In this document: piece after piece, positions 6,628 through 32,377 of the stretch
Position numbering within the stretch: the stretch's first letter is position 1
How the letters are laid out: every line of letters begins with the position of its first letter
DNA from: Haliotis rubra
Lineage: Eukaryota
DNA length: 64,000 nt
Direction of reading: 5' to 3'
Assembly (NCBI RefSeq): GCF_003918875.1
Contig: NW_025766447.1
Location: 3,472,001-3,536,000, forward strand
The notes under the pieces: generated by a model
Seen by the model: the letters and a program-made list of their open reading frames with translations, nothing else
Told to the model about the DNA's origin: nothing
Database searches by the model: none
Made by a program: the position numbers and the translations under genes

Positions 6628-9600
6628 CTATAGTGTGGACGAGTGCACGGTAAATGTTCTTGTGACATACTGGAAGTCCTCGGGGGCGTCTATAGCAGTC
6701 GCCATTATCGTCACAGTTCTGGAAAGACATTGAGCAAACATGAAGGGAACGACAGTAGTGTACTTCAGACCCAGACATAATTTTCATTATAATGGTAGAT
6801 CTATTATTAATGTGACAGTTTCAACTAGCCACATGATATATGATGGACAATATGATGGAGATAGTAAGTAGAACTTCCAGTTATATGGTGGGCCATCTTT
6901 CCTACGATGGTGTTGGAGATTCCGAGCTAGAACAGTTTCCCAGCAAGCTATGCTGGTCACGTGAGGCCAATCAGAAGTATGGGTGGTCAGGCTCGGCGAG
7001 TTTTTGATAGCATGCCATTGTATCCCAGATGATAATGATTGTCTAGTCTAGACTCGACTATGTAAAGGAATCCTTTACTGGAACTGTGATACGCTCGTCG
7101 TTCAATGAAAACAATGAAGGAAATGTTTCGGATGTTGTATGTCCAAACAAATTTGGTAATGACCTTGAGAAATATAAATCGTTTCTCGCGGCAAACAAAC
7201 AAAATGTTTTGGTCTCAATGGGGTTTTGTGTAGTTTTGTTCGCAACGACACCTCTAATGCTTACAAAACTATTTTCTCACAAAAGCAAGGTTTTAAAAGA
7301 AGGCTGATGATGATATATATAGACGATGCTTACGTTGACACATCGGGAGTCCTTCCTGCGGCAATTACAACTTTACGTCTCGTGTTTTCCCCCGGCTGAA
7401 GATTCAGTGTGATGCCTGAAGTAACTGCTAGCTTCAGACTGTCTGCTACATCCAGTTTCACTCTTTCAGAGTTGCGTCCCTTGTTGATGACCTTCACATG
7501 TATGTGTGTTTCACTTCCGACTTGAAGATCTCCTGGTATACATACATCCAAAGGAACAGATATATGATAATGAACGCTCCGTGCTGCTACAAATAACGTA
7601 CAACTCGAAATACACAGCTGGGCAAAAAGGGTATTCATTTGGAAATACCAAACCTTCAAAAGTTACTAGGCCGAAAATCATCACCCAAACACGGCAGAAT
7701 GCAGCTATGATGTCAAATACATCACTATCGAATGACTATTTCTTGTTTGTCAGACGTTGGTGTGTCTTATGCACGGCAGATTAGTTAAAATGTCATGTCA
7801 ATAACGGAAATCCCATGGACAACACGGATATAACGAAAGAGAATGCAAAGGAAATTATTTTTACGCATCTTCAAATAATGAACAATCCTATGATGTTCCT
7901 GACGCACTGACGTTAACGGAGGAACAGACTGAGACATAAACTGACCAACAACTCGTTCCACGCTGAGGGACAGGGTGCTAGGCTTAATTAGATCAGGCTT
8001 CTGTCGTTGAAACAGGTGCCCGTCGTTATCCCGCCCTTCAATAGCCATGCGATAAGGCTGGAAAAGAATACCATGATCAATTGCTTGCCTCATTGGAAAA
8101 CCGCATACTGGCATACAATATTGCTATTTGTTCACAGCCACTTGTAAGCTATAGTAACGGGATCGTAAGTAAATGATCGAGTGTGCTAGTAACAGACTAC
8201 ATGGTCTGTAGCATATACCTGATCGGGAACAGCGATACTGGCAACAAAGTTGTGGCCTCTCTTCTTTCTGTGTGTGAGGCTGCAGCGGTCGATCTCCTCA
8301 CCCACAGTGTTATAGAGGATCAGAGAGTCTATGGAGGATACAGCGTTAGCTGCCGTCACTGCCACAGCGTGGGTCACAGATTCACCTGAAGATGCATATT
8401 CAGAACAAGTTCATAAAATACCCAAAACAAACGACACACATTTAGTCACACTTGCAAACAGAATGAACACACTCGAGTTGCCGATGTTTGCCACCAGAGT
8501 GGCTTCTCTGTCTGTCCCAGTGGTTTGTCGAGCCGAGGCACATCCGTGGTTGACAGCACGATGACACGCCGCCAGTCATGGATCTCTCAATCTTCTTTAG
8601 CTGAACTAGCGTACACCATCAGAAACATAATTGCAGTAATAGTCATGAGCATGGGTATGAAAACTTGGTCCGAATATACCCGAGGTTGTCCGAAGATTCC
8701 CGAGAATGTGATCTATGACGACTATATCACTACGACTGCACTGTGACTATGGAGTGGAGTGGTCGTGATTTTTGTGATTAGTCCTGAATCTCGAATATTT
8801 CTGACATTGTTTGTCAACCATACGATTGACGACGAGACAATATAAATCAAACCTAGTTGAAGGACGAACTGATAATATTTGCCAACCATCAGATAAATGG
8901 ACGAAATAAGTTAGCAAGTAAGTACAATTTCAGCCTTACCTACTACCGGTTTCCCCTCGATGAACATACTGTGTCCGTTGTCATTTGTTTTGACCATGTT
9001 GTCTTTAATGTCTAACACCGAGTTGCCGTAGATGCTGACCTCAGCGACGTCACTGCCGTCGTTCTTTACAGCCCACTTGCCAGGCTTGGGGGCCTAGATT
9101 TGTAACAGAAAAGAAAAGAAGTACGGACAAAATATCTAAAAAGTAAAAGTATAACACATAACTAAACTATAAGCACGTTGGTTACGGGCAGATGACAATG
9201 TATGGAAGAACGGTGACTTTGTGTCTACCTCAACTATGAGTTCGCCTTCTTCGTGTTGGGTGACAGGAACCAGTTCACCTGCAAACACAATACATCGAGA
9301 ATATTTAACCACAACTGCTGAAAACAACAATAACTACTCTGTAATACTGAAACATCGAAAATGTTTTGAAAATATTACCATTTTGCGTAAATCATATTGC
9401 CCACTGTGATAAAGTCATTAGTTTAAGATATTCTAACGGGGGTTGAAGTATGTGTATAATACGCGTGGTTATACATTAAAGGCACCTACCGTACGGGTTA
9501 AACACTCTCACGCCCCCATTGTTGTTGCTTCCTATCAGTAGCGTCTTGACCGTGTTGTCCACGTGGAACATGTTTATTGAGAGGCCTCCGAGGGAGAATT

Positions 9601-12600
9601 CGCTCAAGAGAGGCAACTGCCTCTGAGGAATCTGAAAGGTATACGTCATAACATATACATGCGGGGCGGTGGGGTAACCTAGTGGTTAAAGCGGTCTCTC
9701 GTCACGCCAAAGACACGGGTTCGATTTGCTCAATGCGGCGTAAAACTAAACTCACTCACATATACATGCATCGTACACCCAGAAATATGTATCATTTCAT
9801 ACCGAACGAGGGTCTGAATACACAGTCTTTCACAGTGATGTGATATCACGAGACTCCGAGGTTCAATGCACTGTAACATAACTGGAGGCAGCGACACGTT
9901 ACACATTACCTTACCTTATTTGGTCTTGCTGAATATGACGAGGTTATGTGCTGTATGTCAAATCCAGGTGTCTTGGGGTTAAACTGGACAGTGCCACGAC
10001 CTATGCAGATTCACAAGCGTTTTTTCATCATAAGTAATTTTGTAATCAGTACTGTTATTTACCTACATTGTTTGATACCATAGTGCCTTATCAATGATAA
10101 TTACTTAATTAACTTTAAATTGAGAAAGGTGCCCTGAAAGGTAGATGTCATGTAGACACTTGCCACTGTTTCTCTTCCTCCGCGAGCAGTCTCCGGTGAG
10201 AATGAAGCTCACTGCGATCTTCTTTTCTGTTACCATGCTCGTGACGTAGTTGATCTTGGCCGCGTCTTTGGGCGAGGCGTCGGTAAAGACGTACACCTTT
10301 GAGTTAGGGTTGGCAACAGTAGCGGCTGTCGATGGATGAACTACGTTTCATATATTGCTTTCCGTAGTAGTTTTATGAATATGTCTACAAATACAGCAGT
10401 ATGTTGAGAAAAACGTTTAATTACCATCCATGCATTACCCGAAAACATGATGCTACATTATAAGTCATTAACCATCGCAAAAAGTATTTTCAACAGGTTC
10501 AGTCAATCTTACTAATTACAGACCAAGTCAGGAGTTTGTGTCATTTACGAACAAAGCGAAGAGAATCCAGGACTGTCTGCATGTACTGGACACATACCTG
10601 ACTATACCCTTGTCGGGGAAACTTCTGATCGGTGTTTATGGCGCACCTGCCTGTCGACCTGTGAGGGAGAACTGTGATCGGTGTATATGACGTACCTACC
10701 TGTTGACCTGTGAGGGAGAACTGTGATCGATGTATATGACGTACCTGCCTGTCGACCCGTGATCGGTGTATATTACGTACCTGCCTGTCGACCAGTGAGG
10801 GAGAAACTGTGATCGGTGTATATGACGTACCTTCCTGTCGACCCGTGATCGGTGTATATGACGTACCTACCTGTAGACCTGTGAGGGAGAACTGTAATCG
10901 GTGTATATGACGTACCTGCCTGTAGACCTGTGAGGGAGAACTGTAATCGGTGTATATGACGTACCTGCCTGTAGACCTGTGAGGGAGAACTGTAATCGGT
11001 GAATATGACGTACCTGCCTGTCGACCCGTGATCGGTGTATATGACGTACCTGCCTGTAGACCTGTGAGGGAGAACTGTAATCGGTGTATAAGACGTACCT
11101 GCCTGTCGACCTGTGAGGGAGAACTGTGATCGGTGTATATGACGTACCTACCAGTAGACCCGTGATCGGTGTATATGACGTACCTGCCTGTAGACCTGTG
11201 AGAGAGAACTGTGATCGGTGTATATGACGTACCTGCCAGTAGACCCGTGATCGGTGTATATGACGTACCTGCCTGTAGACCCGTGAGGGAGAACTGTGAT
11301 CGGTGTATATGACGTACCTACCAGTAGACCCGTGATCGGTGTATATGACGTACCTGCCTGTAGACCCGTGAGAGAGAACTGTGATCGGTGTATATGACGT
11401 ACCTGCCAGTAGACCCGTGATCGGTGTATATGACGTACCTGCCTGTATACCTGTGAGAGAGAACTGTGATCGGTGTATATGACGTAGCTGCCTGTAGACC
11501 TGTGAGAGAGAACTGTAGTCGGTGTATATGACGTACCTACCTGTAGACCTGTGAGGGAGAACTGTAATCGGCGTATATGACATACCTACCTGGAGACCTG
11601 TGAGATCTGTGAGGGAGAATTGTGATCGGTGTATATGACGTATCTACCAGTAGACCCGTGATCGGTGTATATGACGTACCTACCAGTAGACCCGTGATCG
11701 GTGTATATGACGTACCTGCCTGTAGACCTGTGAGGGAGAACTGCAATCGGTGTATATGACGTACCTGCCTGTAGACCTGTGAGGGAGAACTCTGGACAGT
11801 CACCTCCTCCATGGACTGAGAGACTAGAGAGATAATTCATCACAGCCGTTCCATTCTTGGATTTAAATATATCCGTCTTGTTACCTGAAACAAATTGGAT
11901 TCTGAATGATTTTGTGCTCATTCTGTTATCCATTTAATTCGGACTGTATGATTTGATATTTGTTTGTGATCAATTGTGAGTGAATGTGCGAGTGAGATGA
12001 CACGCCCCCATCCAGCAATGTAGCAGCAATGTCACCCCGGGGATACCAAAGTCGGACGCCACACCATTATCTATTCCCTCACCCCGGCCATGTTATCCTA
12101 TATAGTACCTGGATCGTTAAAGGTAACGACGATGTAATTATAGGGTTGGTTTATTGTGCCAAGTGTTTCCTTGATAATTTCCTGTGTCTTTTTTATGACG
12201 GCGGCAAGGTCGTCGCCCATGGAGCCGGTGGTGTCGATGACGAAGACCATGGAGTTTCCAGCCGTCAGTTGCAACAGTTCCTGAAAGTTCTCATCTCCAA
12301 TCAGGGAATGTAGACCATACGCTAGAAACAAAATACAACCAGAGAAATAGTTATAGGGAACATCTGCAGCATACTTGAACGATCCAATACTGCATTCAAG
12401 ACTAAAGACATAATTATAGTTCACTTTGAGCCAAACCCAACTGGAGAAATAATAATTACGGAAAATCTGTCGTCGGATTGGCAATCGGACTAAATTTGAT
12501 TAAGTTCATAATCAACTCCCGTGAATTATCTTGGTTAATGGTCTTTTGCTGAAGTTTATCACATGTGGCAGCTCATTCAAGGGAACTGTTGTAGTAAATA

Positions 12601-15600
12601 AACAATGGAAGAGTGAATGTGCTTCTACCTGTTACATAAAGGGTGGCGTGAATGAAGTGAACAAACTATATTTGACATGTAGGTCTCCGAGGTTCATAAT
12701 ATTTCAAGCGAACAAAACTTGAGTGAAAAGTAGACTGTTGAAAGAAATCTACAACTTGTGAATATGAGCCGAATAGGGACACACGAATTATAATCAGACA
12801 GTATCAACCCGAAATACAGAAGAAATGTTTACTTAAGTGAAGATCCGTTTACAAGTAGTCTTCAGCAACTCATGCTTGTCTTAAGAGGCGACTAACGGGA
12901 TCGTGTGACTCATGTCCTAGTATCCCAAATCAGTAGATATTTACAGCCCGCCGCCATATAGCTAGAATATTGCAGAGTGCGGCGTTAAACAACAAACAAG
13001 TAAGAATTATTTTCAATAAATGTGTCTGTGAATCGCTAAATGTGGGACACTTGCGTATTTACCAGGGTGTCCAAAGAGGAACCTAGTGTGCATGATCGCC
13101 CCCTGAGCGGCGGTGTCGTGAAGCGGGGCGTGGGGGGACATTTTGGCGTCGCTAGTGTCCTTGTTGATACCGCCGATAGCAGCAATGGTTTTACCAGACT
13201 GGTCATACGGGCCGCCGTGACTACATTTCCCCGTCTTGAACGTCGCTGGGTCCTCTGTAAGCAAAGTGTTTCAGTTCGTGAGTGAGTTGGGTTATACGCC
13301 GATTTTAGCAATCACGGCGGGAACAACAGAAAATACTTCACACATTGTACCCATGTATGAAATCAAAGCCGGGTCTTTAAACATTGGGTTACCCCTGTTT
13401 CCGTTAGGCAGAGTTCATTTAATGGCCAATGAATGTTGAGGGTACTATGTGAACAATCTGTTTCAGATGGATGAAGTAGATCGGTTGTCTAGTAAATGTC
13501 GATGTACATTTTACAACCTTTGGCGAGCATACATTAATTTACAGAAACATGGTTCTTTTAACCATGCAAACATCTCAGCTATACTATTGTCAACCAAACC
13601 CGCTCCCTCCCCAAAGTGACCCTCAGCTGCAGTTCGTTATATCCGAAGTTCGTTAGTCACTGGTTCGTTACTCCAGGGGTCAGCAACAGCATCTTGTATC
13701 CGGCAGCCGTGGTGCCATCCGGATTCAATGTACTCACTTGCCGGCTTGTGTCTGTCCTGTCCACTCCGGTATCCACTGGTCAGAAGGGGACCTTGGACTA
13801 TGATGTTGGCTGTGCAGGGTATCCCAGTAGAAGAGCTGAAAGGGGAGGGCGGTTCGCTGTAGCGGTTCACTGTTGTTAGAGCGTGTATCCAATGTACATT
13901 TCTGCATTGAAGGTTTAGTATTGGTCGGCAAACGGTATGCACATACTCTCCCATAAACATTAGATAGCATCATTCTTCCTCAGTTTCATACTTATTTGTA
14001 ACGCTGTAGGCTTATTTCATTGTATTCAGCAAATATACCTAGCAATATATTCATGAAGGGTGTCTGGACTGAAGGTCATGCATACATTACCAACACACTG
14101 CAGCCAACAGTTCATAACAGCTGAATATGCATACAGGTCATACAGAGTACAGCTGCACTCACCCACAGCTGCGACACGTGTCCATGGCGGATGGTGCCTG
14201 GGCCATGAGTGGTTTTCCCCGCATCCCTGTAGACAGACACGCGGTGATGTTGTTAGTCGGTACGTAGTGTTGCTATAGTCAGCAATGTTACAACTGTGTT
14301 ACAGTTGTTAGATACAACCAGTTGTTAAATGTAAGTCATAAACAACAGTCATCAGGAAGGTTGACAAACACTGCGCCAAGACACGTGGATTACTGAGGAT
14401 GCAGTGATAAGGGTGTAAGGGGTGTTATTAGTTCTTGTGTCTGGGGATGTAACGCTGTGCCTAGCAATATTCCAGTTGTATGAAGGTGGCCTGTAAATAA
14501 TGGATATTGTCAACAAAGACCAGGGCGTCATGGTACAACACGCTATCAACCTCGTCACCGAACCTGACCACCCAATCCACTATAGTTCACCTCTTATGAT
14601 CAGCATAAGTTGCTGGGATCCCACATCTGAATCCTCTCGTTGAGGACATGTGTGAACAAAGTTACAATTACTCGAGACTTATTCGACTATTCGAGGATAT
14701 TTTTACTTTTATCAACGAGTGCTGATATTTTCTATATCAGAAGACACGAGGGTGAGATTCTATTTATCATCAAAGATCACTCTTCATTGGTTTTGAAAAA
14801 TGTACATCTCTGAATACGGTACTGCCATTAGAATTGGAGTGCAGCGATGTCATAGCATTGTGACGTCATCAGATTTATGACGCCATACCATTGTGAGTCA
14901 TGTAATTGATGATGTCAAAGCATTGCGAGCTCATGTAATTTGATGAAGTCAGAGCATTGTACAAAATCTATTGTCAAAAACGATATCTCACACAAGCAAT
15001 ATCTCCATTGGAACACAGTTTTGGATAATAAAGACTTCTACATACACAGGATGCTATCAATATCGGCTGACTGTGCGAAATCTCACAGAACAAAATCCTG
15101 CTATGCAGAATGCATTTGTCGTGTGTATTGTTCATTCCGTAATTCATGTTTTGTTAACTTACTTACATATAAAAACGTCAATACATTAATACATGGTTTG
15201 AGCATACCTAGAGACTCATAGGCCGCCTTTCCACTGAGTTCCGGCCAGTTGGTGTTGCTGTAGAACATCTGGACAATGTGTAGAAACTGACCAATCAACT
15301 CTCGAGCAGCATCGAGGTTGGGATTGGTCTTGGTCTTGTTTAAAACATTGATGGCTGTTTCCCGTAGCAACGTGATCTTGTCGTTACCTGAAGTCGTCAT
15401 TATATTAATGAATTGCATTTCAATAAAACATTAAAATATTGAAATATTACTTTAAAATTCCATTACGTAGCATCACCCCATATTGATGGTGTTTCCAATT
15501 CATTTACGGATGATGAACTTCTGACAGCCGAGTGTATCAGTATACCACTTTAACATTAATTATCACATTCACAGCTAAAACAACACTTACATTTTCACCG

Positions 15601-17977
15601 ACCAATCTTATTTGAATAAGACGTCAAGTTCAAAGGTCAACTTTTATTTCTGACGTGACCTGAAATGGGATGTTGTCAGATCTTTGTGTAACGTAAGTGA
15701 GCACTGTAATCTAATCTGTCATGTTTAGTTAATATGCCAATGGCACCTTCTTTGATGGCCTCCCCGTTGACGTGCCAGGCAGACTCGGAGTAGTGGTCCT
15801 GGTCCACTCTGTTGTTGGCCTTCACGATGTCATCGATGGCCTCCTGGAACCGCTTCTCAGATACAGTTCCTGTCATCAAATTACATACAATAACACAACA
15901 ACCACAATCTACGAGGCATGATCTGTTTTGGAACATGGCAAAAAATGGCGGACATCACCACATGTTCCTTGTTCAAAACTCTATGCCGTTATGCAAAATG
16001 TTTTACGAAAACATTTACACAATATGATATATAGTTATGGTTAGTTTTATACGTTGTGCAAAAATGGGCATCTCCAGGGACCCTGAGAATATTATAGAAT
16101 GATCAGGAAAGCGTACCCAAAAATCTCTATTCTGTACTGTCATTTTGATACCTTTGTACGGAACTTGAATTAATTGTGAACAGAATATAATTGTTAATAA
16201 TAGCAAATTATTTTGCTGGAATCAACACGTTTCACGCCTAGTTCTTTTACGGATTGATTATTGATTAACGTTTCTGGTTTACCATGGAATCAACACGTGA
16301 CCATATTGACCTATCTATCTAATACTGACGATGTTATATTATCACTTCTGATACAAGAATAATGGATGACGTCATGTGGTTTTGTTAACAGGCTGCATTT
16401 TGCTTGAATTGACCAATCTCTGAGAGTCTGTAATTGGTAGTCTTTCTTCAGCCTTCACAACAGAGTATCACAAGAGCTAGCTAAATATCCTGCCATTCTG
16501 ACTGCGTTAATGTGCATATTACCCGCTTATATGTTGTTCTGGTGAGGTGTTATCTATAATGTGTCTACATTGCCTTGTATTCTCTCGGGTAAACTTCAAA
16601 TCCAAACAATGATAACGAATGCTGTGGTGACGTCGAATGAACGAAACCTCTCAAACACGTATCAAATTCATCCTACGACTGATTAAAGCATCTGGAACAA
16701 TGTCGTCGCATCATAGAAAGAAGAAAATCGTCGGCAAAGCAATGTCTCCTGAGCACCATCTCTGGACTTTAGTATCAGAACCAACATCATCGTACAACCC
16801 CATTTCACAACGATTTCACAGGACTACATCATGACACAGGTTCATTTGCAACAGCAGCAAATCCATGACTGCGAGAGATATCTGAACAAATGTGGAAAAC
16901 CTGTGGATGTTATTCTGGTACAACAACACCGTCTACTGGCAGATAACTGCATAACGATATGGGTGAAACTCCCACACAGGTATAGGAAATCTGGGGCAAG
17001 AACAGTCCTATGTTCTTGTGATGATGTACTACCTTTGTTCCCAAAGCAAATTCTTCTAACTTCATCTTTCAAACTGATGACCATGCATACCGCAAACTAA
17101 ATTGATTACAAATAAATTCATGACAGTGAAACATTCTGTAGTTTCGATCAGGTTACTTTGTGTGTTTATCTAGTTTAAGTTTCACTAGCCAATGAGAAAA
17201 TTACTCATTAAATAACAAGTTGCCGGAATAACTTGAAGGATATGAACAACCTTGTTCTGACAGGGTGTCATCATGTTGTAATGAAATGACATACTACTGT
17301 TTCAGGAAATGATTAATCAGTTACAGATAATCCTTAAACATCAAACCTCGTAAGCTATATTCAACGTATTCTTGGATCACTTCTATATCTGAAACAAACA
17401 TCTATAACCCAAATGACGGGAACATGGCAGTTCTTTCAGTTAATATAAACACATTCCAGCCAGATGGCAGCGGTTTGTAAATAATCGACAATCATATAAA
17501 ACAACCAATCCAGTGATTGTCATCACGAACATGGATCTGCCCCAATTGGGATACGATGACATGCAATAAATAAGTCAACCTGACTTCCCGATCCAGTTAA
17601 TCGCCTCTTACGACGAGTTTCGGTTCCTGAAGATCAATTATAACCTGGTTCTTCACGGGTTCGGACATTGGCATGAAATGCTCACAATTAAGTTTTCTTA
17701 GTTTCAATGGCTTGTTGGTTATACCTCCGTAATACTTGTCGAAGAGCTTCCTGGCTGTGATGTCCTTAATCCCGGTAAGCGCCCCAGGAGATATGGACTT
17801 GCCAGGCAAGGGGTTGTTTTCGAAGAACTCGGCGACAGCGTACAGGATGCCGATCTCCGTGATGTCCTGATGGGTGTAGTCGGAGCCTGAGGACAGGAGG
17901 GTGAACTGGTTGGGGAGGAACCCCCGGGCACAGGGCCATGATATCAGCGTTAACACTGTCAACAAGGTAAATAACAT
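6628..17977 (-). CDS. VWA7-like paralogue B, secreted, ~801 aa (signal peptide, Het-C-like domain, vWA, Ig-like C-terminal region)
   Basis: 17 phase-consistent exons: 17725-17977, 15747-15869, 15208-15387, 14163-14226, 13738-13835, 13063-13254, 12109-12321, 11765-11884, 10164-10325 (GC donor), 9915-10000, 9490-9631, 9229-9278, 8940-9093, 8219-8385, 7946-8057, 7334-7532, 6628-6718; total 2406 nt. Motifs: signal peptide then GFLPN, THQDIT, LLTSGY, KCSHGG, GGINKD..SPH..LH, vWA VFVIDTTGSM, GGGDCPE, VYVFTDA, furin-like RRKR. AATAAA (minus strand) near 6566-6571. Confidence 0.88.
10592..11790. repeat. Minisatellite of 49- and 36-bp units overlapping the exon 8 donor of paralogue B
   Basis: About 25 copies of GTACCTGCCTGTAGACC(TGTGAGGGAGAAC)TGTGATCGGTGTATATGAC. 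Confidence 0.95.
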
Positions 17978-18380: not shown

Positions 18381-19253
18381 TACTGAAAGGCAAAAGAAAC
18401 GTCGCAATATTAGAAATGACATTTGAGTATCAATGGAGTATTTGAACCTATTTTTTTAAATATACACCAGAAGTCAAGTTTGAGGAAACATGAATCGTGG
18501 TCGTATAGCCTGCATTGCCCAATAAAGTATTGTTTGAGATTGAAGTTAGAATGTTTTTGTTTTTGGAGAGGGAAAAGTTCCCACAAACACAACATTGAAA
18601 TCGAGATGCACGTGCATCATAAATGCATTCAGGCATAAATTGCCGGCTTGAATGGCAATCGTTCACTTGTTTTCTGAACACAGCAGCTATGACTAGGTTA
18701 ACGAGAGATAAACCACAACAAGCTATTGGACGTCTGCACGCTGGTCAACATGCTCGAGTCATTGCTAATGACTTCAGTTGCAGCGTACGAACGATAGAAC
18801 GTCTTAGAGTGCGATACAACGCCACCAGCAGCACTGATGACCGTCCACGTAGTAGTCAACCCCGTGTAACAACACGTCGCCAGGACCGTCATATCGTCCA
18901 TCAACACGTGCAAGACCTATTCGCAAGGGCCAGAGAAACAGCTTGGGTGACCATAGGAAACCACCAGCGACCAGTCGGTGACCTACAATTCGGCGACGTC
19001 TCCAAGCCAGGAACCTGTTTTGTCGATGTCCTGCCAGGAGACCCATATTCACCCAACGTCACTGCCGGGAACGTATCCAAGTGGACACAACAGCGGCAAA
19101 ACTGTCGTGGGGGACAATGGAGAGGGGTTATCTTCTCTGATGAAAGTTGGTACTGCATTTCAGTGGCGTATTATTTTAAAAACATAGGTTCAAACGTCCA
19201 TTGATACTTAAATGTCATTTCCAATATTACGACATTTCTTTTGCCTTTCAGTA
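18381..19253 (+). mobile_element. Internally deleted Tc1/mariner DNA transposon
   Basis: Terminal inverted repeats TACTGAAAGGCAAAAGAAA.../...TTTCTTTTGCCTTTCAGTA. N-terminal transposase remnant (MTRLTRDK..AIGRL, DRPRS.QPRVTT.RQDR, WRGVIFSDES) truncated after the first catalytic D. Confidence 0.92.
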
Positions 19254-21953: not shown

Positions 21954-22171
21954 TATAGTGTGAAGGATGTCTTAGTTGCCTGAAATGTCGTCACGTCAGA
22001 TTCCTTGTTCCAACACTGATAATCAGTGTAACGAAATGAGATCTAATGAAGACAAAACTATTCTTTGTGACATAAATAGCCCTTTAATATATTCTTCGTA
22101 CTTTTGGTCATTGTATTAATAGCATGTGACCGTCTGAAGATGTCTCGTGTGCAGATTCCGCAATAGCGCCT

Positions 22172-25100
22172 TCATTGCTGAAATATACAGAAATACTAAA
22201 TACAGTTTCAATAGGTGTATTTCTTAATAAACTGACATACAAAACAAAGTACATGCCTGGCGCTTGGGGAATACTTCCCCCTAAAAGATCAAGTAAATAT
22301 TTTGACAAGTGTTTAATTGTGATGTACAAATCACATATCTTGTTTACATGTTGCCACGACACCACAGATTCCCTTCACAGGTATTCATTTGTTAAGTTAT
22401 AAGCATGTTATACGACAACAGTATCAAAACCATTGAGATTGTTAGTTGTATACCTGTAGAAGGCACACATCAAAATGCCAAGATTGGACATCCCACCTAC
22501 CTCTGACGCGTGCACTGTAAATGTCCTCATTACATATTGGTAATCGTCACTGGCATCAACAGGGGCAGCCTTGATCATAACGTTCCTGGAATATACACGT
22601 TGTGATGTCACACAGGTAAATGTTATATCCTTTAAATACACTTATACTCTATAACACATTTTGTGAGTGAAAATGAATTACTACATGTTGTTAATTGGAG
22701 AACTACATTCTCGAAACTCTGGATCAGTTTAGGATATGAATAGGGTTTATATATAAGGGATATTTTTATGTGCAACCTGTTCCGGTTTGAGATCGTCATA
22801 CTTGTATGACTTTGGTCATTTCTAAAAGAGTTAAAAACGTTCAGCATATATTGAAAAAAATAATTTTTGTTCGCTGGAATGTCAAACAGGTTACATAAAC
22901 AAACTTGATAAAATGACAGTCGCTAAACATGTAGTGCAAGATCAAGGAAAGTACGGCCACTCCCCAGGGTCAAACAGATAGACAGAAATCACTTACGAAG
23001 ACACCCCCGCATAGTGGCCGCCATTAAGTTCGAAGTATACAGTGACACTGACTCCTGTCCACAAGTACACTGTTTTGTTGGTGGGGGGCGAGACGAGGCC
23101 CTGGTCATCACTGATGCTCATTAACACCTTCTGATACGCGGACCCGCGATTGACCGCCTCCACGTGCAGGTACATATGCCCGTCCACCGCGAGCTCACCT
23201 GCAGAAAGTATACACAATATTTTGTACCTGCACAGTGTGTACGTGTAGCTGATATATACAATACTGTGTACCTGTTGATCACCTGTATAGCATATAAATA
23301 ACATTGTTTTCTTGTGGGGAATAAAGACGATAGCGTTTACCATTAAACCACATGCATTGCCTTTACACAATAGCGTGTACATGTAGAAAAATAATCAATA
23401 TTGTTTACCTACAGAGAGTGAGTGGGTGAGTTTAATTTTATGCAGCCTTTAGTACCAGAAATGGGCTTCACACACTGAATCCATGTGGGAAATCGAACCG
23501 GTTTATGGGCGTGACGAACGAACGCTCTAAACACATGGCTACCCTACCGCCCTTATCTCCAGAGAGTAAACGAACAATGTTGCTATTCTGCAAATCACCT
23601 TTGGATGGTTCAACTAATGTTGGAACAAATCGATACAAACAGTAGACATGAAGGTTCACCTTCAAACAAGTTATGAATATTAGTTTAAATACAGCGACCC
23701 AACTTCCATGTGAAAAAACAACCATAACTACAAGCAGTGATGTTTTGTGGATGTTTCAAGCACGTTCGTTGAACAATAAGTTTTCTATGAGACAATGCAC
23801 AATAATCAGGTATACACCTATCCTACCTTTAATATCCTGTATTTTCAGGTCCAAGGCACTGGGTTTTACAAGCGACATCTTGGCTCTCTTGAACGTATTT
23901 CCAAGCTTGTCTTTCCCTCGACCCCTACTCGGAATGGCTGCAATTGAGAACACAGTCGGCATTATACAATACACCCATTGTTTTTTGCACTTTTAAAAAA
24001 AAGCCAAACACATGCAGGAATAGTTTTCACCTTTTTGACTTTGAAAAAGTGCTACTATTCATCAATGTGTTATTTTATGTACAGAACAAAGGTTTATGTC
24101 TTCGGCAAACTCTTTATCTCAAACATATTACTTTTGCACTACCGGCGAAAGAGAAGCTGACTCACGACAGAGGGTATAGTACCCTGCGCCCCGTAGCTGT
24201 CACCCCTGTGACCTTGGGGGAGCAGTGGGGCGCGGTACAAGACGACGCCCTTCTCATCAATAAACACAACGTCATCAACCGAGCCCTCCTCATCGGCCCC
24301 TGAAACCTGGATCACGACAGGCGTGGTTGTACCTGAGTAGTAGAAGAACAGAGAATGAATGTTGTATAACGCCATGTTATGGTGGTCTGTAAAAAGACGA
24401 AACAAGTTGATAGTTCTTGAGTAAAGATCACCGATGAGTATTGAACGTTGACAAGGGCACCCAATGTTAGCAACCAGCTCTTGTTGCCGTCGGTTCACAC
24501 TATTGGACAGTAAGGACCTATTCAGAGCTGGAAGTCTCTCGGAGCCGGACTCGTTGGGTGGATTTGTGCCAGGATTCGCTGTTTGGGAGTTCGAATCGCC
24601 GATTCATTTCAAGACATCTACTACATTCACATCAAAGTTGATAATAAGTTTATTCTGCGATACTCAATACTAGTATTATTTCAAACAGATATCCACGTAG
24701 GGCTATGTTTCGTTCACAAATCCAAACACTAAAACGACAACGCCAGAGAATAGGCAGCGTCAATTGTCCTCTATTAGGCGTTAAAGTGAAAATAGTGATG
24801 AAAATCCTAAGAATGGATCACTGAAAATTAGAGACGATAGCATGTGTTCGCGAAAAGAGTAACTCACGCTTTATTTCTCTTTCGTGATGACCAAAACTAA
24901 ATCTTGAAAAGGTTTTCGTTTCTTCCCAAACTTAAACCTTCTTAGATTAACAATAAATAGTATTTCCCTGCGACTAGTCATATGTACACATGTTAATGTT
25001 ACCGACCCATGATAGGTCTTCCCTCCATCTGCATGCTGTAGCCTGTCACCGCATGTGTAGCTATGAACGTGATGGAGAAGTCCACGATGGTCTCGCCGTA

Positions 25101-28096
25101 CACGCTGACGTCCCAGTCGTAAGTGTCCAGCTTCTGAAGCCTCCACTCGCCATACTGCGATGCCTGGGGTTAGAGGTAAAGATGCAATATGACGACGTCA
25201 TCAAGACAAGACGCCTTGAGCATGCACTAGTTGCCTGGATATATGCGCTATATAAATATCCTATCATCATAATAATGAAAAAATAATAATAAGTTGTCGA
25301 TTGGAACCAGCGTTGCAGCCTTACAACTCACAATAATGGCGGTACTGTACAATTCTATTACAATAAATGAAGGTACTCACATTTGAAGGTACCGCATTAC
25401 CCATAATAATGGTAGGTAAACTATGATTTATAATGGAAGGTGAACAATACAGTAACTTATACCAATGGAAAATGCACTACGCACAATATCGGCACGGCAC
25501 GGCTCACATCAATAGAAGGTACGGCATTACTTATAAAGATGGACTGTACACTGTTACTCACGCCAATAGAAGGTACGGCATTACTTATAACAATGGACTG
25601 TACACTGTTACTCACGCCAATAGAAGGTACGGATTACTTATAAACAATGGATTACTGTTATAACAATAGAAGGACGGCATTACTTATAACAATGGACTGT
25701 TACTCACGCCAATAGAAGGTACGGCATTACTTATAAATATGTACACTGTTACTCACACCAATAGAAGGTACGGCATTACTTATAACAATGGACTGTACAC
25801 TGTTACTCACGCCAATAGAAGGTACGGATTAAAGAAATTTTTTAAAACACCCAACATAACAAAATAGGTAAATCTAAAACATACGGTCAGGGGGCGAAAA
25901 TACAATGGAGAAACATTTCAAAAGATTTCACAAAATATGTCGGTCGGTGAAAAAAGTAAACTCAGTCAAAGAGTTACTCATTCCGAAAGTGCCCAACGTG
26001 AACTAGGTTTTATAACTGGATTTAGATAATGGCCACAGGGGAAGTTACAATGAGATTGTTCTAAACCGTATTTTAGTTTTTCACTTGTGCAACAATGGTT
26101 CGGCAGATTCGACAGATACTATGATTACAATATAGTGAAACAATCGATGTCAGAATGTAGTCGAGTCTTCATCTTACCGGAATCACTATTTCGAGGGCTC
26201 CATTCCCCAGATAATCCTCCGACACAATTATTGGGGTGCCTGTAAACGTGAAAACACCGTGAAAGTTATCTTTACAACAACTACCGTACGATGTGTATCG
26301 ACCGTGTTGGTGGCTGTGCATTTATAAGTGTGAGTTTGAGAGTGAATAGTGTGTTATTATTATTATTCTGTTTTCAATATTTCATCCTTGATATAAATAT
26401 TTGTCCTCTGAACGGTGACTTCACAGTTTCAAAGATTGTGCCCTAACTGGAATTCAGCGTCGTGAGCACGCTTTATCCACGAGGCTACTACACTGCTTTC
26501 TCCACAAGATGACGTGCACACCTTTCTTAAGTCCGTAGATTACAGGATCTTACAGCAAACGATGCCTTCATTCAAAGGCACAGTGTATTCCACTCAAACA
26601 TCTTTTCTTCAATGTTTTTCAGTGGTACAGCACAACACTAGCAATGCATTATTACGTAATGCCCTTATACACCAGCTTTACCTTGTGGGTAATGCAGTTT
26701 GACGACTGGTTTGGCTTGTTTGGTTGTCTCCATGATACGTAGCTTGACGTGGCTGAGTGTGTTGTCCACTGGTATGTTCCGGTAAGGGTCACTGGGAGAC
26801 ATGTGGAAGGAGGCAAGCAGGACGTACGCGTGGGCAGAATCCTGCAGCAAAACATTTACTCTGAAAGATTTTACTCCAAAATTTCCAAGTTTTAATCCAG
26901 ATAAGGTGCCGAATCTTACCACGTATAGCTTGGTCACTTGACCAGGTATCGATGGAATCCGGGTTTCGCTGCGTCTATGAACCTTGTTTGTCAGTACGAC
27001 ACCTGTATCCGGTTTGCACCATAACCTGCACCACTCCTGCTTGTCTTCCCACATTAAGTCGTCATGAAACTCATTCACTCAAAAATATTAATTCACCAGA
27101 TGATATGTACTATTGTCCATCATTAGGCGATACCCTCTCCCTTCATCCCCGGTGTTTATGGTTCACCAGTTGTCCCGTACACACGAGCCTGCTCTTTCTA
27201 GCAAGATTTCAAAGAGCGTCATACAACCCTTGCTAATTAAGAAGTTGGTTGATAAAGGTTTCAAGGTCTCAATAACGTTTCGAGAATACCTTATGGTAGA
27301 CTTTTAGGTAACACTTCCAAATTTGATTCATCAGTGACAATTATGTCCGGTGCAATTCCCTATTTCGACATGTTCCGTGGATGTTTTGTCAGGTGAGCAT
27401 TTGACTTGCCTGTGCATGTGTGCGTGATGGGTGCTACAGATGGGGAGGGGTATGCTCACCCTTCCCCAAACCACCCGGATATCATCACCGTTTAGTTGGA
27501 GATGATTCTGGAACACATGCTCATGTTTCGTTTGCAAATGCAGTAGCCTCTCTGTTTGGCAAGGATTTATTTATGAACATGGGAAGGATTTTGAAGCTTT
27601 ATATTTTTAGATACGAACGCAGACGACAGTTACCTTGATGATTCCCGCCACCTGTGAGACGTTGGTCTTGTCTGTGTTGAAGACATTTCCGCCTGATGAT
27701 TGGGCGATCTGCTGGTACACTGAATCTGGTGGGTGAAATAAATAACAGTTATACTGTTCAGATCCATCCATTATGATTTTAACATCACAGTAAATGTAAA
27801 ATGAAAAATAATGACATGTTTTCAAAAAAGAAATTTTGAATTAACGTAGTTTTGGCAACATGTACCACTCCTAATGACCTCTTTGAATGTAGCAGAATAT
27901 CTATTAGTTCTTGAAATGTTCAAAGCTAAATAGAAATGTTTCAGATGTATCCAATTGTCCAAAAATATAAATTTGATAAACATCCATAACTTCTACCTGC
28001 GCTTCTTTTCTTCTTCTGGATTGGCAAAAAACCCTCCACGCAGAGCACACTTATGGACACAACAAACAAAATGGCGGTAAGTCGACAGGCCATCAT
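22172..28096 (-). CDS. VWA7-like paralogue C, N-terminally deleted (signal peptide + KKKR + C-terminal half only), ~380 aa
   Basis: Exons 27997-28096 (MMACRLTAILFVVSISVLCVEGFLPIQKKKRSA), 27634-27725 (DSVYQQIAQSSGGNVFNTDKTNVSQVAGIIK), 26682-26841, 26178-26239, 25007-25163, 24166-24332, 23827-23937 (1 nt short), 22997-23198, 22501-22585, and an uncertain last exon (CAA TGA at 22172-22177). Exon sizes of 157, 167 and 202 nt match the homologous exons of A or B. Confidence 0.8.
25503..25830. repeat. ~54-bp minisatellite in intron 4 of paralogue C
   Basis: About 6 copies of CTCACGCCAATAGAAGGTACGGCATTACTTATAACAATGGACTGTACACTGTTA. Confidence 0.9.
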
Positions 28097-29906
28097 TTCG
28101 TTTTCACAATTATGCACTGTTTAACACAACCCGCTTCAGCCTGAATATAGCTTCCTATTGCACATCCAGCCAAAAGGTGTTTTCGTGTATGCAGAACTCC
28201 GCTATTGTTACAACTTGTCCTCTGTAAGACTTTTAATGACAGAACCTTGTTTTAAAGCTATTATATAGACACTGACGCCCATCCTTTATCGGAACATCTT
28301 CATTACCGATCAAACAAATTGTAGAAGGATTATAAGGTTTGGGGAGTAACATCAGTTTGAAATCAAGTTTTTCTCTTGTAATCACGTATGTCCGCCCAGG
28401 TCACGTCATTGTTGACCTTCTTTAAGTGGCTGTCCGCGCCCAAGAAAACACGATATGTACATACACATCAACACCATTGACCGTTTTACAGGACAGGCTG
28501 GGGGACACGGGGAGACAGCGGCTTCGGGGTGACGCTGTTCGCTTTGCAGAGTTGTACAGAGCTGCAGAGATGCCGAAGTGGGGACAAAATCCGCTGATTG
28601 TCGATTCGATTTCGGTATGAAAATTCCTTATTCTTCCAGCAACACACTCATGTCGATTTCCATAAAGGGGTACACAACCTTGACCTTGGACATTTGTCCC
28701 ATGTAAGCTGACGTGTCTCCATGTTGATTAAAGTGATTTTAAACCCAAATCACCCACTCATTCACGTGTCCATTTCAGCACAGTTACATCTGCGGGATTA
28801 CACGTTTCCAACTCTGGTTATCCATGGCCCTCTTATGAAAGAAATCATGAACATCAATATGCCACCGAAGAGACGTTAAAGAACACGGTATTAATTCTTA
28901 TTACTACAGATTATCTGCCATGCCCAATCAACAGTTGTAACATGAAAGAATCAGGCGATTAATAAGTTCCTTCAGCAGTATACAAATTGTTAAGCCTAAG
29001 CTGTCTGTCATATGTATGTGAAAGAGGTGAATAAACCATTAAATCTACCAACTGTAAATGGATGTACATATGATGAAAATTGTACACAATGATATAAAAA
29101 GATGAAAATGTCAACAAATTAGTAAATGTACAAGGTAGTGTCAAACTGACAGTGTGTGGGAAATTCAAGTAAAGACGAAGCCTGTCGCATCGAGCTCCTA
29201 GAGTAGATGTTATATCTCGGAAGTGTTTTATCTAGGAATGTGGCGCATGGAACCAGATTGACATTCTAGGGATATATAGCTGCTGCTGGTATATCGATGA
29301 CAATAGAGACACATTGTGTACGCATTATAAATACTACAAACTTAATAAATGGGATGTTATTTCTAAGCAAAACCTTTGTCATGGAATGTCAATCCGACAT
29401 TAAACGTTTAATCTATTTGCAAACAAACCTTTTAATCATGGAAATCCCTAGATAAGCAGATGGACCTAACCCTCGGTCGTGGGCCGCATAATGGTGTTGT
29501 TTATACCAACAGACTAATTCAATTTGAGTCTGACATTTTGTGTGTAGGTAAAACAACCTCTCACGCACACTGTCCTCTAAACACCAACATTAGCGACTTC
29601 CACGCTACATCTTCACAAGCTAAGTGTACGTGTGTGATGGATGTCTATAGCAGAATATACACACTTACGTTCATAGGTAGCGTGACTCTCTGACACCAGT
29701 GATGTCTGCGGTCAAAGTTTAATGTTTTGGACAAATATTGGTTCAGTGGCCTTCGACCTTACCTATACAAAGATACACAAGTATCTGTCACGATTTACGT
29801 CAAATGGTATAGCTGGGATCACATGCACAAAGCGATTGCAGATTTACATCAGACTTACAGTTAACACTGCCTGGTCTCCTGGAACTAGTCAAGACACTGC
29901 CCCACT

Positions 29907-30869: not shown

Positions 30870-32377
30870 TACTGAACATCATTGAAAACGCGCCAGTCAA
30901 AAATTGTCCATATTTTCATCAAGATGGATTTCAGCATGACAATGATCAATGAATATAATTAACATGAAGTTGAAGGGCATGACCAGTTGAAAAAAACGCT
31001 TTAGAAACAAATTCCTGTCTACAGTATGACTCTTAATTCCAAAATGCATCAACATGCAGCCACGTCATGAAAAAAGCGCGAATTTCATTCTGAAATCATA
31101 CTGACTGTGACATTAATAGCAGGTGTATGAGAACCGATGCTCATTGCTTCACTAACGATTGTGAAACGAGGACAGAGATGCCGAGGTTAAGACCTCACGA
31201 AAGAGAACGTGCACTAGGCATGATTCAGGTTGGCACCAGCAGCAGGGATGTTGCTCGACAACTTGGACTTGGCCACTCCACCATCGTTAGGCTTTATAGA
31301 TGACATCAGTAGACAGGCAGCACCCGTGACCTTCAATGACCTTGGGATCAACGTGTTACGACGCTCCATCAGGATCGCCATATTGACCTCGTCCATATCA
31401 GTGATTGAACACTGCCGACTGCCAGGACTGCTGCACTAGTTCAAGGTTGACGTGGGGGTCATCAGACTCCATGCGACGCCGTCTACACGCTACAGGGCTC
31501 CATGCTCGACGTCCTTACGTTGGACCAATTCTGACTGACAGACACTGTAATGAGCGTATACAATGGGCTAGCAGGCATTTTCAGTAAAGGTTACAACAAT
31601 TGCATGGTGTGGTAGTCACTGACGAGTCACGTCTTCATCTACGTAATGCTGACAGCCGATTACGTGTTTGGCGTAGACGTGGTGAACGTTATGCTGATGA
31701 GTGTGTGGTTCAGACAGACCTTTGGGGGATGGGAGTGTCATGGGCTGGAGTGGAATAAATTACAATCACAGGACTGCCTTCATGTCTTTCAAGGAAGATT
31801 TAATGCCCTTTATTACCGTGAGCAGATTCTTCAGAATCACATCGTATCTGTCTTCAATCACCACCAAGATGTCCATACTTTTCAACAGGACAACGCACGG
31901 GCACACACAAAAAGATTTCCATGCAGTATCTGACCCAGCAACACGTCCAGGTTATTCATTGGCCAGCACAGTCGCCAGATGTATCCCCCATAGAGCACTT
32001 GTAGGACGAAATTGGTCAAAGTCTTTTGCGGCGACAACAGATGCGAAACATCCGGGACCTTGAGGCTGCACTACTGCAGAAGTGGAATGCCATCCTCAAG
32101 AACTCTGTTCGGACTCTTATTGACTTAATGAGGAGACGTTGAACTGCATGTGTCAATGCAAATTGCGGTCAAACGCGATATTGTCTTTTCGATTTGACCC
32201 CACGTGTGTTTGATCCTTTCTGACTGTGGAACATTTCAATGAATGAGCGTCTTTTCTGTGTTGTTATTTTTGTCAGTCAACAATCTGTTATTATTCACTA
32301 AAAAAATATCAATTCCTTGCACATGCTTTTAATAATCTGAACTTTTATAAGTGGTGCGTTTTCAATGATGTTCAGTA
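30870..32377 (+). mobile_element. Full-length but inactivated Tc1 transposon
   Basis: Terminal inverted repeats TACTGAACATCATTGAAAACGC / GCGTTTTCAATGATGTTCAGTA within TA runs. Transposase from 31178 (MPRLRPHERERALGM) with VTDES, FQQDNARAH and SPDVSPIEHL motifs, broken by stops and frameshifts. Confidence 0.93.

What the first reader, a model, noticed from the sequence alone, without database searches (positions are those of the whole stretch)
22172..28096. A 'C-half-only' VWA7 paralogue: signal peptide fused straight to the furin site
Seen: exon 1 encodes a signal peptide ending VEG|FLP, the same mature start as paralogue B (ARG|FLPN). It is followed at once by IQKKKRSA, which splices in phase into DSVYQQIAQSSGGNVFNTDK... 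In B the RRKR site comes only after ~440 aa of Het-C-like and vWA sequence, and no such exons are visible upstream of C (28.1-34 kb). Known: YxxIAxxSGG is the C-terminal helix/strand segment of VWA7/hemicentin-type vWA domains. Inference: C separately encodes the fragment that convertase cleavage would release from a full-length protein, and the two retained junction motifs suggest a precise, maintained deletion.
Basis: partly seen in the sequence, partly recalled or inferred. Interest (0 to 1): 0.85.

Follow-up and report, generated by a model that had tools for sequence, protein, structure and literature searches.

The report
Abalone VWA7 paralogue lacking its front half
This abalone gene encodes only a signal peptide, a short basic cleavage motif and the back half of a VWA7-like protein; four abalone species keep it and it is under strong selection, but the copy in this blacklip abalone assembly has a one-base frameshift.

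Summary
The window is Haliotis rubra (100% identical to GCA_003918875.1). The sequence-level observation holds. A minus-strand 10-exon gene (28096-22172) starts with a family-type signal peptide ending CVEG|FLP. Then come IQ-KKKR-SA and a phase-1 GT-AG intron into DSVYQQIAQSSGG. That segment is the last helix-strand-helix (alpha5-beta6-alpha6) of the vWA domain.

No VWA7_N or vWA exons lie upstream. NCBI models of the orthologues are 380 aa (H. asinina), 382 aa (H. rufescens) and 539 aa (H. cracherodii, extended at the 3' end by a repeat). None has room for the ~440-aa front half.

dN/dS is 0.09-0.15. C is sister to neighbour B and equals a B-type protein lacking residues 25-462.

Caveats:
The exon 7 A-run is A3 (23912-23914) where two other species have A4. 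Under conserved splicing this gives a premature stop.
- NCBI calls only 142 aa here, and the H. rubra branch shows relaxed constraint (p=0.009).
- No RNA data were available.
- Exons 1-2 of the orthologues could not be fetched.
- KKKR is a weaker convertase site than RRKR.

The scan also noted the linked B/C split-vWA idea (s1-335104). My data fit it but do not prove it.

The parts
28031..28096 (-). Exon 1, signal peptide (22 codons, MMACRLTAILFVVSISVLCVEG)
   Evidence: and 4 translations. The hydrophobic core ILFVVSISVLC has a Kyte-Doolittle mean of 2.99, with V at -3 and G at -1. It is homologous to VWA7-like signal peptides.
28016..28030 (-). Exon 1, FLPIQ: the first five residues of the mature VWA7_N domain, kept
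   Evidence: B has FLPNQ, and the family consensus is FxPN at the mature start.
27997..28015 (-). Exon 1, KKKR-SA plus the first base of the Asp codon. A polybasic motif sits directly before a phase-1 GT donor.
   Evidence: B ends its exon 9 with RRKR-NS plus g before a phase-1 intron. A has a phase-1 intron in the same loop.
27726..27996 (-). Intron 1 (271 nt, GTAGAA...CAG)
   Evidence: No RNA support was available.
27634..27725 (-). Exon 2: the vWA alpha5-beta6-alpha6 remnant (DSVYQQIAQSSGGNVFNTDKTNVSQVAGIIK)
   Evidence: Pfam VWA_4 profile positions 152-169 of 169 (E 0.028). The homologous A segment folds as H479-490, E494-498 and H500-514. It is the best-conserved exon of C against the family, at 39-48% identity.
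26682..26841 (-). Exon 3 (start of the galactose-binding-like domain)
   Evidence: Splice sites are conserved in three species.
26178..26239 (-). Exon 4
25007..25163 (-). Exon 5
24166..24332 (-). Exon 6, using the GTGAGT donor at 24166 that is conserved in all three species
   Evidence: An alternative donor G|GTACTA at 24183 would restore the frame in H. rubra, but it is absent in H. cracherodii.
23827..23937 (-). Exon 7. It carries a 1-nt deletion: the A-run is A3 at 23912-23914 where H. asinina and H. cracherodii have A4. Under canonical splicing this gives a stop at 23866-23868.
   Evidence: The NCBI H. rubra model starts at the ATG at 23962 in intron 6 and gives 142 aa.
22997..23198 (-). 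Exon 8 (Ig_VWA7-like domain)
22501..22585 (-). Exon 9 (end of the Ig_VWA7-like domain, ...FTVHASE)
   Evidence: It is 55% identical to the last exon of B.
22172..22177 (-). Exon 10 coding part: CAA TGA (Gln, stop)
   Evidence: It is the same end as the NCBI models in H. rubra and H. asinina.
6631..17977 (-). Paralogue B (P0013, 801 aa, 17 exons), the full-length sister gene. RRKR is at 10171-10182. Its exon 10 (9915-10000) is the degenerate counterpart of C exon 2.

Best explanation
C is a genuine, old Haliotis gene. It arose from a tandem duplicate of a B-type VWA7-like gene by an in-frame loss of about 438 codons. In B numbering the loss runs from F25, just after FLPNQ, to S462, just before RRKR.

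What remains is:
- the family signal peptide;
- five residues of the old mature N-terminus;
- the polybasic motif with its phase-1 intron;
- the last helix-strand-helix of the vWA domain;
- the three beta-sandwich domains (galactose-binding-like, VWA7 beta-sandwich, Ig_VWA7).

The product is secreted. The signal peptide is cut after Gly22, and a proprotein convertase may then trim FLPIQKKKR. The result is the same kind of C-chain that cleavage in the conserved polybasic loop would make from a full-length family member.

Shown here: the gene structure, the homology of both junctions, the absence of front-half exons, synteny and product lengths in three other species, purifying selection, and sisterhood with B. 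Inferred: secretion, convertase trimming, and what the protein binds.

In the H. rubra reference the gene is broken by a 1-nt deletion in exon 7. This is either an assembly or allele artefact, or a very recent loss in this lineage.
For: - Structure and phase.
- The window equals H. rubra GCA_003918875.1.
- Exon 1 is homologous to family signal peptides.
- C residues 28-376 align to family residues ~470-835 at E 1e-46 to 1e-33.
- Exon 2 matches VWA_4 profile 152-169 of 169, while B covers 1-140 and A covers 1-169.
- No front-half remnants lie upstream. A long plus-strand ORF starts at 34167.
- Orthologues sit upstream of B with products of 380, 382 and 539 aa. The extra 158 aa in H. cracherodii come from a 3' microsatellite ORF.
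- All splice sites of exons 3-9 are conserved, and the ORFs are open in H. asinina and H. cracherodii.
- dN/dS is 0.09-0.15.
- B and C are sister clades with 99/97 support, each with the species tree inside.
- B and C exon sizes match: 167, 112 and 199-202 nt.
Against: - No transcript evidence for the exon 1-exon 2 junction in any species was reachable.
- Exons 1-2 of the orthologues lie outside all fetched loci. Conservation of the signal peptide, KKKR and exon 2 rests only on product lengths.
- The H. rubra copy is frameshifted, and NCBI models only 142 aa there.
- The H. rubra branch has 15 nonsynonymous to 10 synonymous changes, against 11 to 31 on the H. asinina branch (Fisher p=0.009).
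- KKKR has Lys, not Arg, at P4. Cleavage by furin itself is doubtful (my own knowledge of convertase specificity).
- The B/C join in the tree is between long branches.
Confidence: 0.72

Rival explanations
1. In H. rubra itself C is a young unitary pseudogene. The 1-nt deletion in exon 7 is real and fixed, canonical splicing gives a premature stop at 23866-23868 with three junctions downstream, and the transcript is degraded. The back-half-only architecture is then functional only in other abalone species.
For: - The deletion is seen against two species.
- The NCBI H. rubra annotation calls only a 142-aa ORF starting in intron 6.
- The nonsynonymous to synonymous ratio is raised on the H. rubra branch of C (15:10 against 11:31, p=0.009). 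It is not raised in the N-half of B (8:21 against 13:43).
Against: - There is no other defect. All splice sites are intact, and exons 8-9 stay open and conserved in the downstream frame (dN/dS 0.09-0.11 against the other species).
- A3 versus A4 in a homopolymer is a typical assembly or polishing error.
- One contig of the ~97%-identical relative covering exon 7 has an unlisted 1-letter indel that could lie at this site.
- The counts are small.
Confidence: 0.35
2. The junction motifs are passive relics of the deletion. The mature protein starts at FLPIQKKKRSAD..., no convertase acts on it, and the vWA remnant is just a linker.
For: - KKKR is a weaker site than the family's R-x-K/R-R.
- A single deletion event needs no selection on its end points beyond keeping the frame and the signal peptide.
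Against: - Exon 2 is the best-conserved exon of C against distant family members. Identity is 39-48% even to amphioxus and starfish proteins, against 20-37% for the other exons. That is not expected of a linker.
- The H. asinina product keeps exactly the same upstream length.
Confidence: 0.3
3. The gene is mis-modelled. Exons 2-10 are the 3' part of a longer transcript whose front-half exons lie elsewhere, and exon 1 is not used.
For: - No RNA data were available to exclude it.
- The exon 1 donor GTAGAA is not strong.
Against: - No VWA7_N or vWA coding potential lies within 36 kb upstream.
- An ORF on the opposite strand starts 6 kb upstream.
- Three independent NCBI orthologue models of 380-382 aa (539 with a 3' repeat) leave no room for 440 extra residues.
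- Exon 1 is clearly a family signal-peptide exon.
Confidence: 0.04

Closest known systems
VWA7 / VWA7-like proteins (Pfam VWA7_N PF25107, VWA_4 PF25106, GBD_Hemicentin PF23560, VWA7_4 PF23610, Ig_VWA7 PF23619)
   Same: The signal peptide plus FLP start, the polybasic loop, the vWA alpha5-beta6-alpha6 segment and the three following beta-sandwich domains are homologous. Identity is 27-34% over about 350 aa. Exon structure is shared with B.
   Different: C lacks VWA7_N and vWA profile positions 1 to about 150. Like B, it lacks the Cys-rich repeats and membrane anchor of A-type proteins.
Neighbouring paralogue B (XP_046570368.1, H. rubra; P0013)
   Same: B is the sister gene. It lies on the same strand 4 kb downstream, has the same C-terminal end (...FTVH.S), the same exon sizes, and the same phase-1 intron right after a single polybasic site.
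   Different: B keeps the front half under strong constraint (dN/dS 0.08). Its alpha5-beta6-alpha6 segment is degenerate: AF2 predicts no helices there and pLDDT is 38-56. Its back half evolves three to four times faster than C (dN/dS 0.32-0.48 against 0.09-0.15).
Gene fission / domain-loss paralogues after tandem duplication (general evolutionary class)
   Same: This is a duplicate that keeps only part of the parental domain set, next to a full-length copy, with complementary patterns of constraint.
   Different: The break point coincides with a conserved proteolytic processing loop inside a single fold. I found no description of this for this family.

Membership tests
VWA7-like family | VWA7_N domain (PF25107) | tested here: not met
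   Only FLPIQ remains. No VWA7_N coding potential exists in or upstream of C. B and A hit PF25107 at E 1e-44 to 1e-49.
VWA7-like family | Complete hemicentin-type vWA domain (PF25106, 169 positions, MIDAS DxTGS) | tested here: not met
   Only profile positions 152-169 are matched, by exon 2, at 14.4 bits against a cut-off of 27. There is no MIDAS motif.
VWA7-like family | C-terminal half: galactose-binding-like, VWA7 beta-sandwich and Ig_VWA7 domains | tested here: met
   C residues 28-376 align to P0007 482-833, which carries PF23560 (521-619), PF23610 (639-723) and PF23619 (742-832). Single exons of C do not reach Pfam thresholds on their own. The spliced protein could not be submitted to the Pfam tool.
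VWA7-like family | Polybasic loop between vWA beta5 and alpha5 | tested here: met
   84 of 105 family members have R-x-K/R-R there. C has KKKR at the homologous place, directly before alpha5.
Proprotein-convertase substrates | Cleavage after R-x-K/R-R in the secretory pathway | not testable with these tools
   The motif is KKKR, with Lys at P4. There is no proteomic or biochemical data, and orthologue sequences of this exon were not retrievable.
Secreted proteins | N-terminal signal peptide | tested here: met
   The n-region has Arg, the 11-residue hydrophobic core has a KD mean of 2.99, and V and G sit at -3 and -1. It is homologous to family signal peptides. No dedicated predictor was available.
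Processed or unitary pseudogene | Disabling mutations and neutral evolution | tested here: inconclusive
   There is one frameshift in the H. rubra assembly and raised branch-specific constraint loss. Overall dN/dS is 0.09-0.15 and the ORFs are intact in H. asinina and H. cracherodii.

The most novel reading that the evidence does not exclude
B and C together are a gene fission across one protein fold. B supplies VWA7_N plus a vWA core that has lost its own alpha5 and alpha6 helices. C supplies a well-kept alpha5-beta6-alpha6 that docks into that core in trans, mimicking the two-chain state that convertase cleavage makes in ordinary VWA7 proteins. After cleavage at RRKR, B's own fast-evolving back half would be displaced or exchanged.

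Points that fit this reading:
- Exon 2 is C's best-conserved exon against distant relatives.
- B's counterpart is degenerate and predicted disordered.
- Constraint is complementary: B front half 0.08, B back half 0.32-0.48, C 0.09-0.15.
- The two genes stay adjacent in four species.
Probability: 0.25. Interest if true: 0.8.

Novelty: new variant of a known kind. Interest (0 to 1): 0.52.

Why it matters
VWA7 is a conserved metazoan protein of unknown function. Two points come out of this locus.

First, a polybasic processing loop inside the vWA fold is family-wide, from molluscs to vertebrates. I found no report of it in the searchable literature.

Second, abalone have kept, under strong selection, a gene that encodes only the part downstream of that loop. 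This suggests the back half is a functional unit on its own. It also suggests that the terminal helix-strand-helix of the vWA domain acts as a docking element between two chains.

If B and C really pair, this would be a natural case of a single fold split across two genes at a protease site. That is directly testable by co-expression.

For genome annotation, the H. rubra model of this gene (142 aa) is wrong or reflects a null allele.

Tried and rejected
- **Alternative exon 6 donor at 24183 (G|GTACTA).** It gives an intact 374-aa ORF in H. rubra. I rejected it as the ancestral structure because H. cracherodii lacks that GT, all three species keep GTGAGT at 24166, and the real difference is a 1-nt deletion in exon 7.
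- **RNA evidence.** No RNA run holds the stretch. The three runs offered were genomic contigs of a ~97%-identical relative. Their indel list was truncated, so the A-run could not be read.
- **Exhaustive profile search with exon 5.** It gave only two hits, one of them spurious. It did lead to the Haliotis proteins.
- **Word-based search for 217-691-aa relatives with an A-type fragment.** It did not find the C orthologues.
- **Reaching orthologue exons 1-2.** Loci around the B orthologues of H. cracherodii, H. asinina and H. rufescens stop in exon 3 or exon 8. The spliced C protein has no reference, so it could not be used in the Pfam, structure or exact look-up tools.
- **Weak exon 1-like hit at 18530-18610 (E 0.037).** It has no ATG in frame, lies in B's upstream region, and is treated as chance.
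- **Pfam on single C exons and on the 34167 ORF.** Nothing was found.
- **Literature on VWA7 with furin or Haliotis.** Nothing relevant was found.
Full report
**Identity of the window.** The stretch 22000-27977 is 100% identical over 5978 bases to Haliotis rubra GCA_003918875.1, contig QXJH01000024.1 (locus L001). The window holds three VWA7-like genes.
- A lies on the plus strand at 59-5600. It is cut by the window start and corresponds to P0008.
- B lies on the minus strand at 17977-6631. It is P0013, 801 aa in 17 exons.
- C, the finding, lies on the minus strand at 28096-22172.

**The observation.** Reading the minus strand and translating gives the following.
- Exon 1 is 28096-27997. An in-frame stop lies nine codons upstream of the ATG.
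- It encodes a 22-residue signal peptide with a hydrophobic core ILFVVSISVLC, and V and G at -3 and -1. FLPIQ and KKKRSA follow.
- It ends in phase 1 at a GT donor.
- After a 271-nt intron with a pyrimidine-rich acceptor, exon 2 (27725-27634) continues in frame with DSVYQQIAQSSGGNVFNTDKTNVSQVAGIIK.

B starts with a signal peptide ending CARG|FLPNQ and reaches RRKR only at residues 463-466.

**Is exon 1 a family exon?** The 33-residue exon 1 peptide aligns to the N-termini of the local VWA7-like proteins. One example is TAILFVVSISVLCVEGFLP against TAITYLLCVTVVCVNGFLP of P0004. At most 1 of 2000 composition-preserving shuffles reaches the observed scores for six of the local proteins. More distant Haliotis paralogues do not stand out. 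The signal peptide and FLP are therefore inherited, not convergent.

**The 3' junction.** Three genes can be compared.
- B ends exon 9 with RRKR-NS plus one base, followed by a phase-1 intron with a GC donor.
- C ends exon 1 with KKKR-SA plus one base, followed by a phase-1 intron.
- A has a phase-1 intron in the same loop, between RHG and ETRRRRSAG.

The simplest reading is one homologous intron in the loop. B and C have both lost the second basic site that A-type and other paralogues carry. In B numbering, C equals a B-type protein without residues 25-462.

**What the retained pieces are.**
- Pfam places B's vWA on profile positions 1-140 of 169 of VWA_4 and A-type proteins on 1-169.
- It places C's exon 2 on positions 152-169. 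That match is weak (14.4 bits, E 0.028), as expected for 18 residues.
- In an AlphaFold2 model of A (pLDDT 84.6), the homologous segment forms helix 479-490, strand 494-498 and helix 500-514. These follow a disordered polybasic loop at 458-478.
- The rest of C (residues 65-379) aligns to the galactose-binding-like, VWA7 beta-sandwich and Ig_VWA7 domains of family members.

**No hidden front half.** The first 480 residues of ten family members were searched by tblastn against 27.6-41.6 kb at E<=10. Only the signal-peptide hit in exon 1 and noise came back. At E<=1e-3 nothing was found up to 64 kb. A long plus-strand ORF starts at 34167 and a Tc1/mariner-like remnant lies at 31.6-32.1 kb.

**Orthologues.** B has orthologues in H. 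cracherodii, H. asinina and H. rufescens. In each genome a gene is called directly upstream on the same strand.

| Species | Called product | Locus |
|---|---|---|
| H. cracherodii | 539 aa | L002 |
| H. asinina | 380 aa | L003 |
| H. rufescens | 382 aa | L004 |

These come, and the genes are C orthologues.
- Exons 3-9 have conserved splice sites and open frames in H. cracherodii and H. asinina.
- The in-locus part of the H. asinina gene encodes 300 residues. Its 380-aa product therefore has exactly 80 residues upstream of the point where L003 begins. This is the same as H. rubra exon 1, exon 2 and the first 48 nt of exon 3.
- The extra length in H. cracherodii comes from a 158-codon microsatellite ORF at the 3' end.

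No orthologue has room for a ~440-aa front half. I could not see their exons 1-2, because the loci end too early and no protein search was left.

**Selection.**
- Over 900 aligned coding positions, dN/dS for C is 0.13 (rubra-cracherodii), 0.15 (rubra-asinina) and 0.09 (cracherodii-asinina).
- For B the front half gives 0.08-0.09, but the back half gives 0.32-0.48.
- C is therefore much more constrained than the homologous part of its full-length sister.
- In a maximum-likelihood tree of the back halves, B and C are sisters (99/97). Each contains the same species branching, so the split predates the sampled Haliotis radiation. The tool warns that the B and C stems are long.

**The frameshift.** In exon 7, H. 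rubra has GGGAAAGAC where both H. asinina and H. cracherodii have GGGAAAAGAC.
- With the conserved GTGAGT donor of exon 6 this shifts the frame and gives a stop at 23866-23868.
- NCBI's H. rubra annotation reflects this. It calls only a 142-aa ORF from an ATG at 23962 in intron 6 to the same stop at 22172.
- My first model used a donor at 24183 that restores the frame. That donor is not conserved, so I do not rely on it.
- By parsimony the H. rubra branch of C has 15 nonsynonymous and 10 synonymous changes, against 11 and 31 on the H. asinina branch (p=0.009). The front half of B shows no such excess. This hints at relaxed constraint in H. rubra.
- Against this, nothing else is broken, and the downstream exons remain conserved in the correct frame.
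- The genomic contigs of a ~97%-identical relative show three synonymous changes and one amino-acid change in exons 8-9. The indel table was truncated, so the A-run could not be read. One contig over exon 7 has one unlisted gap letter.
- Whether H. rubra has a working copy stays open.

**The cleavage site.** R-x-K/R-R in the loop between LTGxC (beta5) and Y..LA..TGG (alpha5) occurs in 84 of 105 aligned family members. Forty of them have two sites. They include reptile, lungfish, bowfin, frog, amphioxus, starfish, acorn-worm, bivalve and cephalopod proteins. Processing there is thus probably ancestral to the family. I found no paper on it. C keeps a basic tetrad at the homologous place, but as KKKR. 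From my own knowledge of convertase specificity this is a poorer furin substrate. Cleavage of C is therefore an inference.

**How it probably works.** C is made as a secreted protein. After signal-peptide removal, and perhaps trimming of FLPIQKKKR, it equals the C-chain of a processed VWA7-like protein: a vWA helix-strand-helix followed by three beta-sandwich domains.

Exon 2 is the best-conserved exon of C when compared with distant relatives. Identity is 39-48%, even to amphioxus and starfish, against 20-37% for the other exons and 3 of 27 residues to B. In the AlphaFold2 model of B (pLDDT 87.4), the counterpart segment at 460-500 has pLDDT 38-56 and no helices.

This pattern fits the idea, also raised in note s1-335104, that C's remnant docks onto a vWA core in trans, with B the obvious candidate. 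I rate that at about 25%. It needs pairing experiments or multimer modelling, which the tools here could not do because the spliced C protein cannot be submitted.

**Verdict.** The back-half-only architecture and its selective maintenance in Haliotis are well supported. Convertase processing, transcript structure in H. rubra and integrity of the H. rubra copy are not established. It is a new variant of a known kind, namely a domain-loss paralogue whose break point coincides with a conserved processing loop inside one fold.

Noticed in passing
window 10626-11791 (B intron 8, minus strand): A minisatellite with 36/49/85-nt units. Each unit repeats the last ~22 nt of B exon 8 together with its GT donor, creating more than a dozen decoy donor sites just downstream of the real one.
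   Followed up: partly
L002 6529-7194 and L004 4069-6856: Downstream of C exon 9, H. cracherodii has about 11 copies and H. rufescens about 45 copies of a 58-nt unit. The unit is the last 13 codons of exon 9 (QYVMRTFTVHASQ) plus the GTAGGT donor. It is absent in H. rubra and H. asinina. This is the same kind of exon-end-plus-donor repeat as in B.
   Followed up: partly
alignment A1, columns around P0013 458-500: A polybasic loop, often with two R-x-K/R-R sites, sits between vWA beta5 and alpha5 in 84 of 105 VWA7-like proteins from molluscs to vertebrates. AF2 models it as disordered. No literature was found.
   Followed up: partly
window 6631-10000 (B exons 10-17): B's back half evolves at dN/dS 0.32-0.48 while its front half is at 0.08. 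B's exon 10 product has lost the alpha5 and alpha6 helices.
   Followed up: partly
L002 7976-8449: The H. cracherodii C model (539 aa) ends in a 158-codon ORF made of an 18-nt microsatellite. This is probably an annotation artefact or a lineage-specific low-complexity tail.
   Followed up: partly
window 25503-25831 (C intron 4): A tandem repeat of a 54-nt unit, 6.5 copies.
   Followed up: no
window 31646-32063 (+) and 34167-34631 (+): Overlapping ORFs at 31646-32063 contain a ...QQDNARAHT... motif that I recall from Tc1/mariner transposases. The 154-aa ORF starting at 34167 contains a GSGDGRIV motif that I recall from SAM-dependent methyltransferases. Neither hit Pfam.
   Followed up: partly
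P0001 and P0003 (H. rubra, same 3.9-Mb contig): Other H. rubra VWA7-like records of 736 and 582 aa start in the middle of the vWA or later domains. They look like truncated gene models of A-type paralogues, so short products in this annotation need care.
   Followed up: no
window 28261-28267 (minus strand): A TATATAA motif lies about 165 nt upstream of the C start codon. It may be the core promoter. It was not tested.
   Followed up: no
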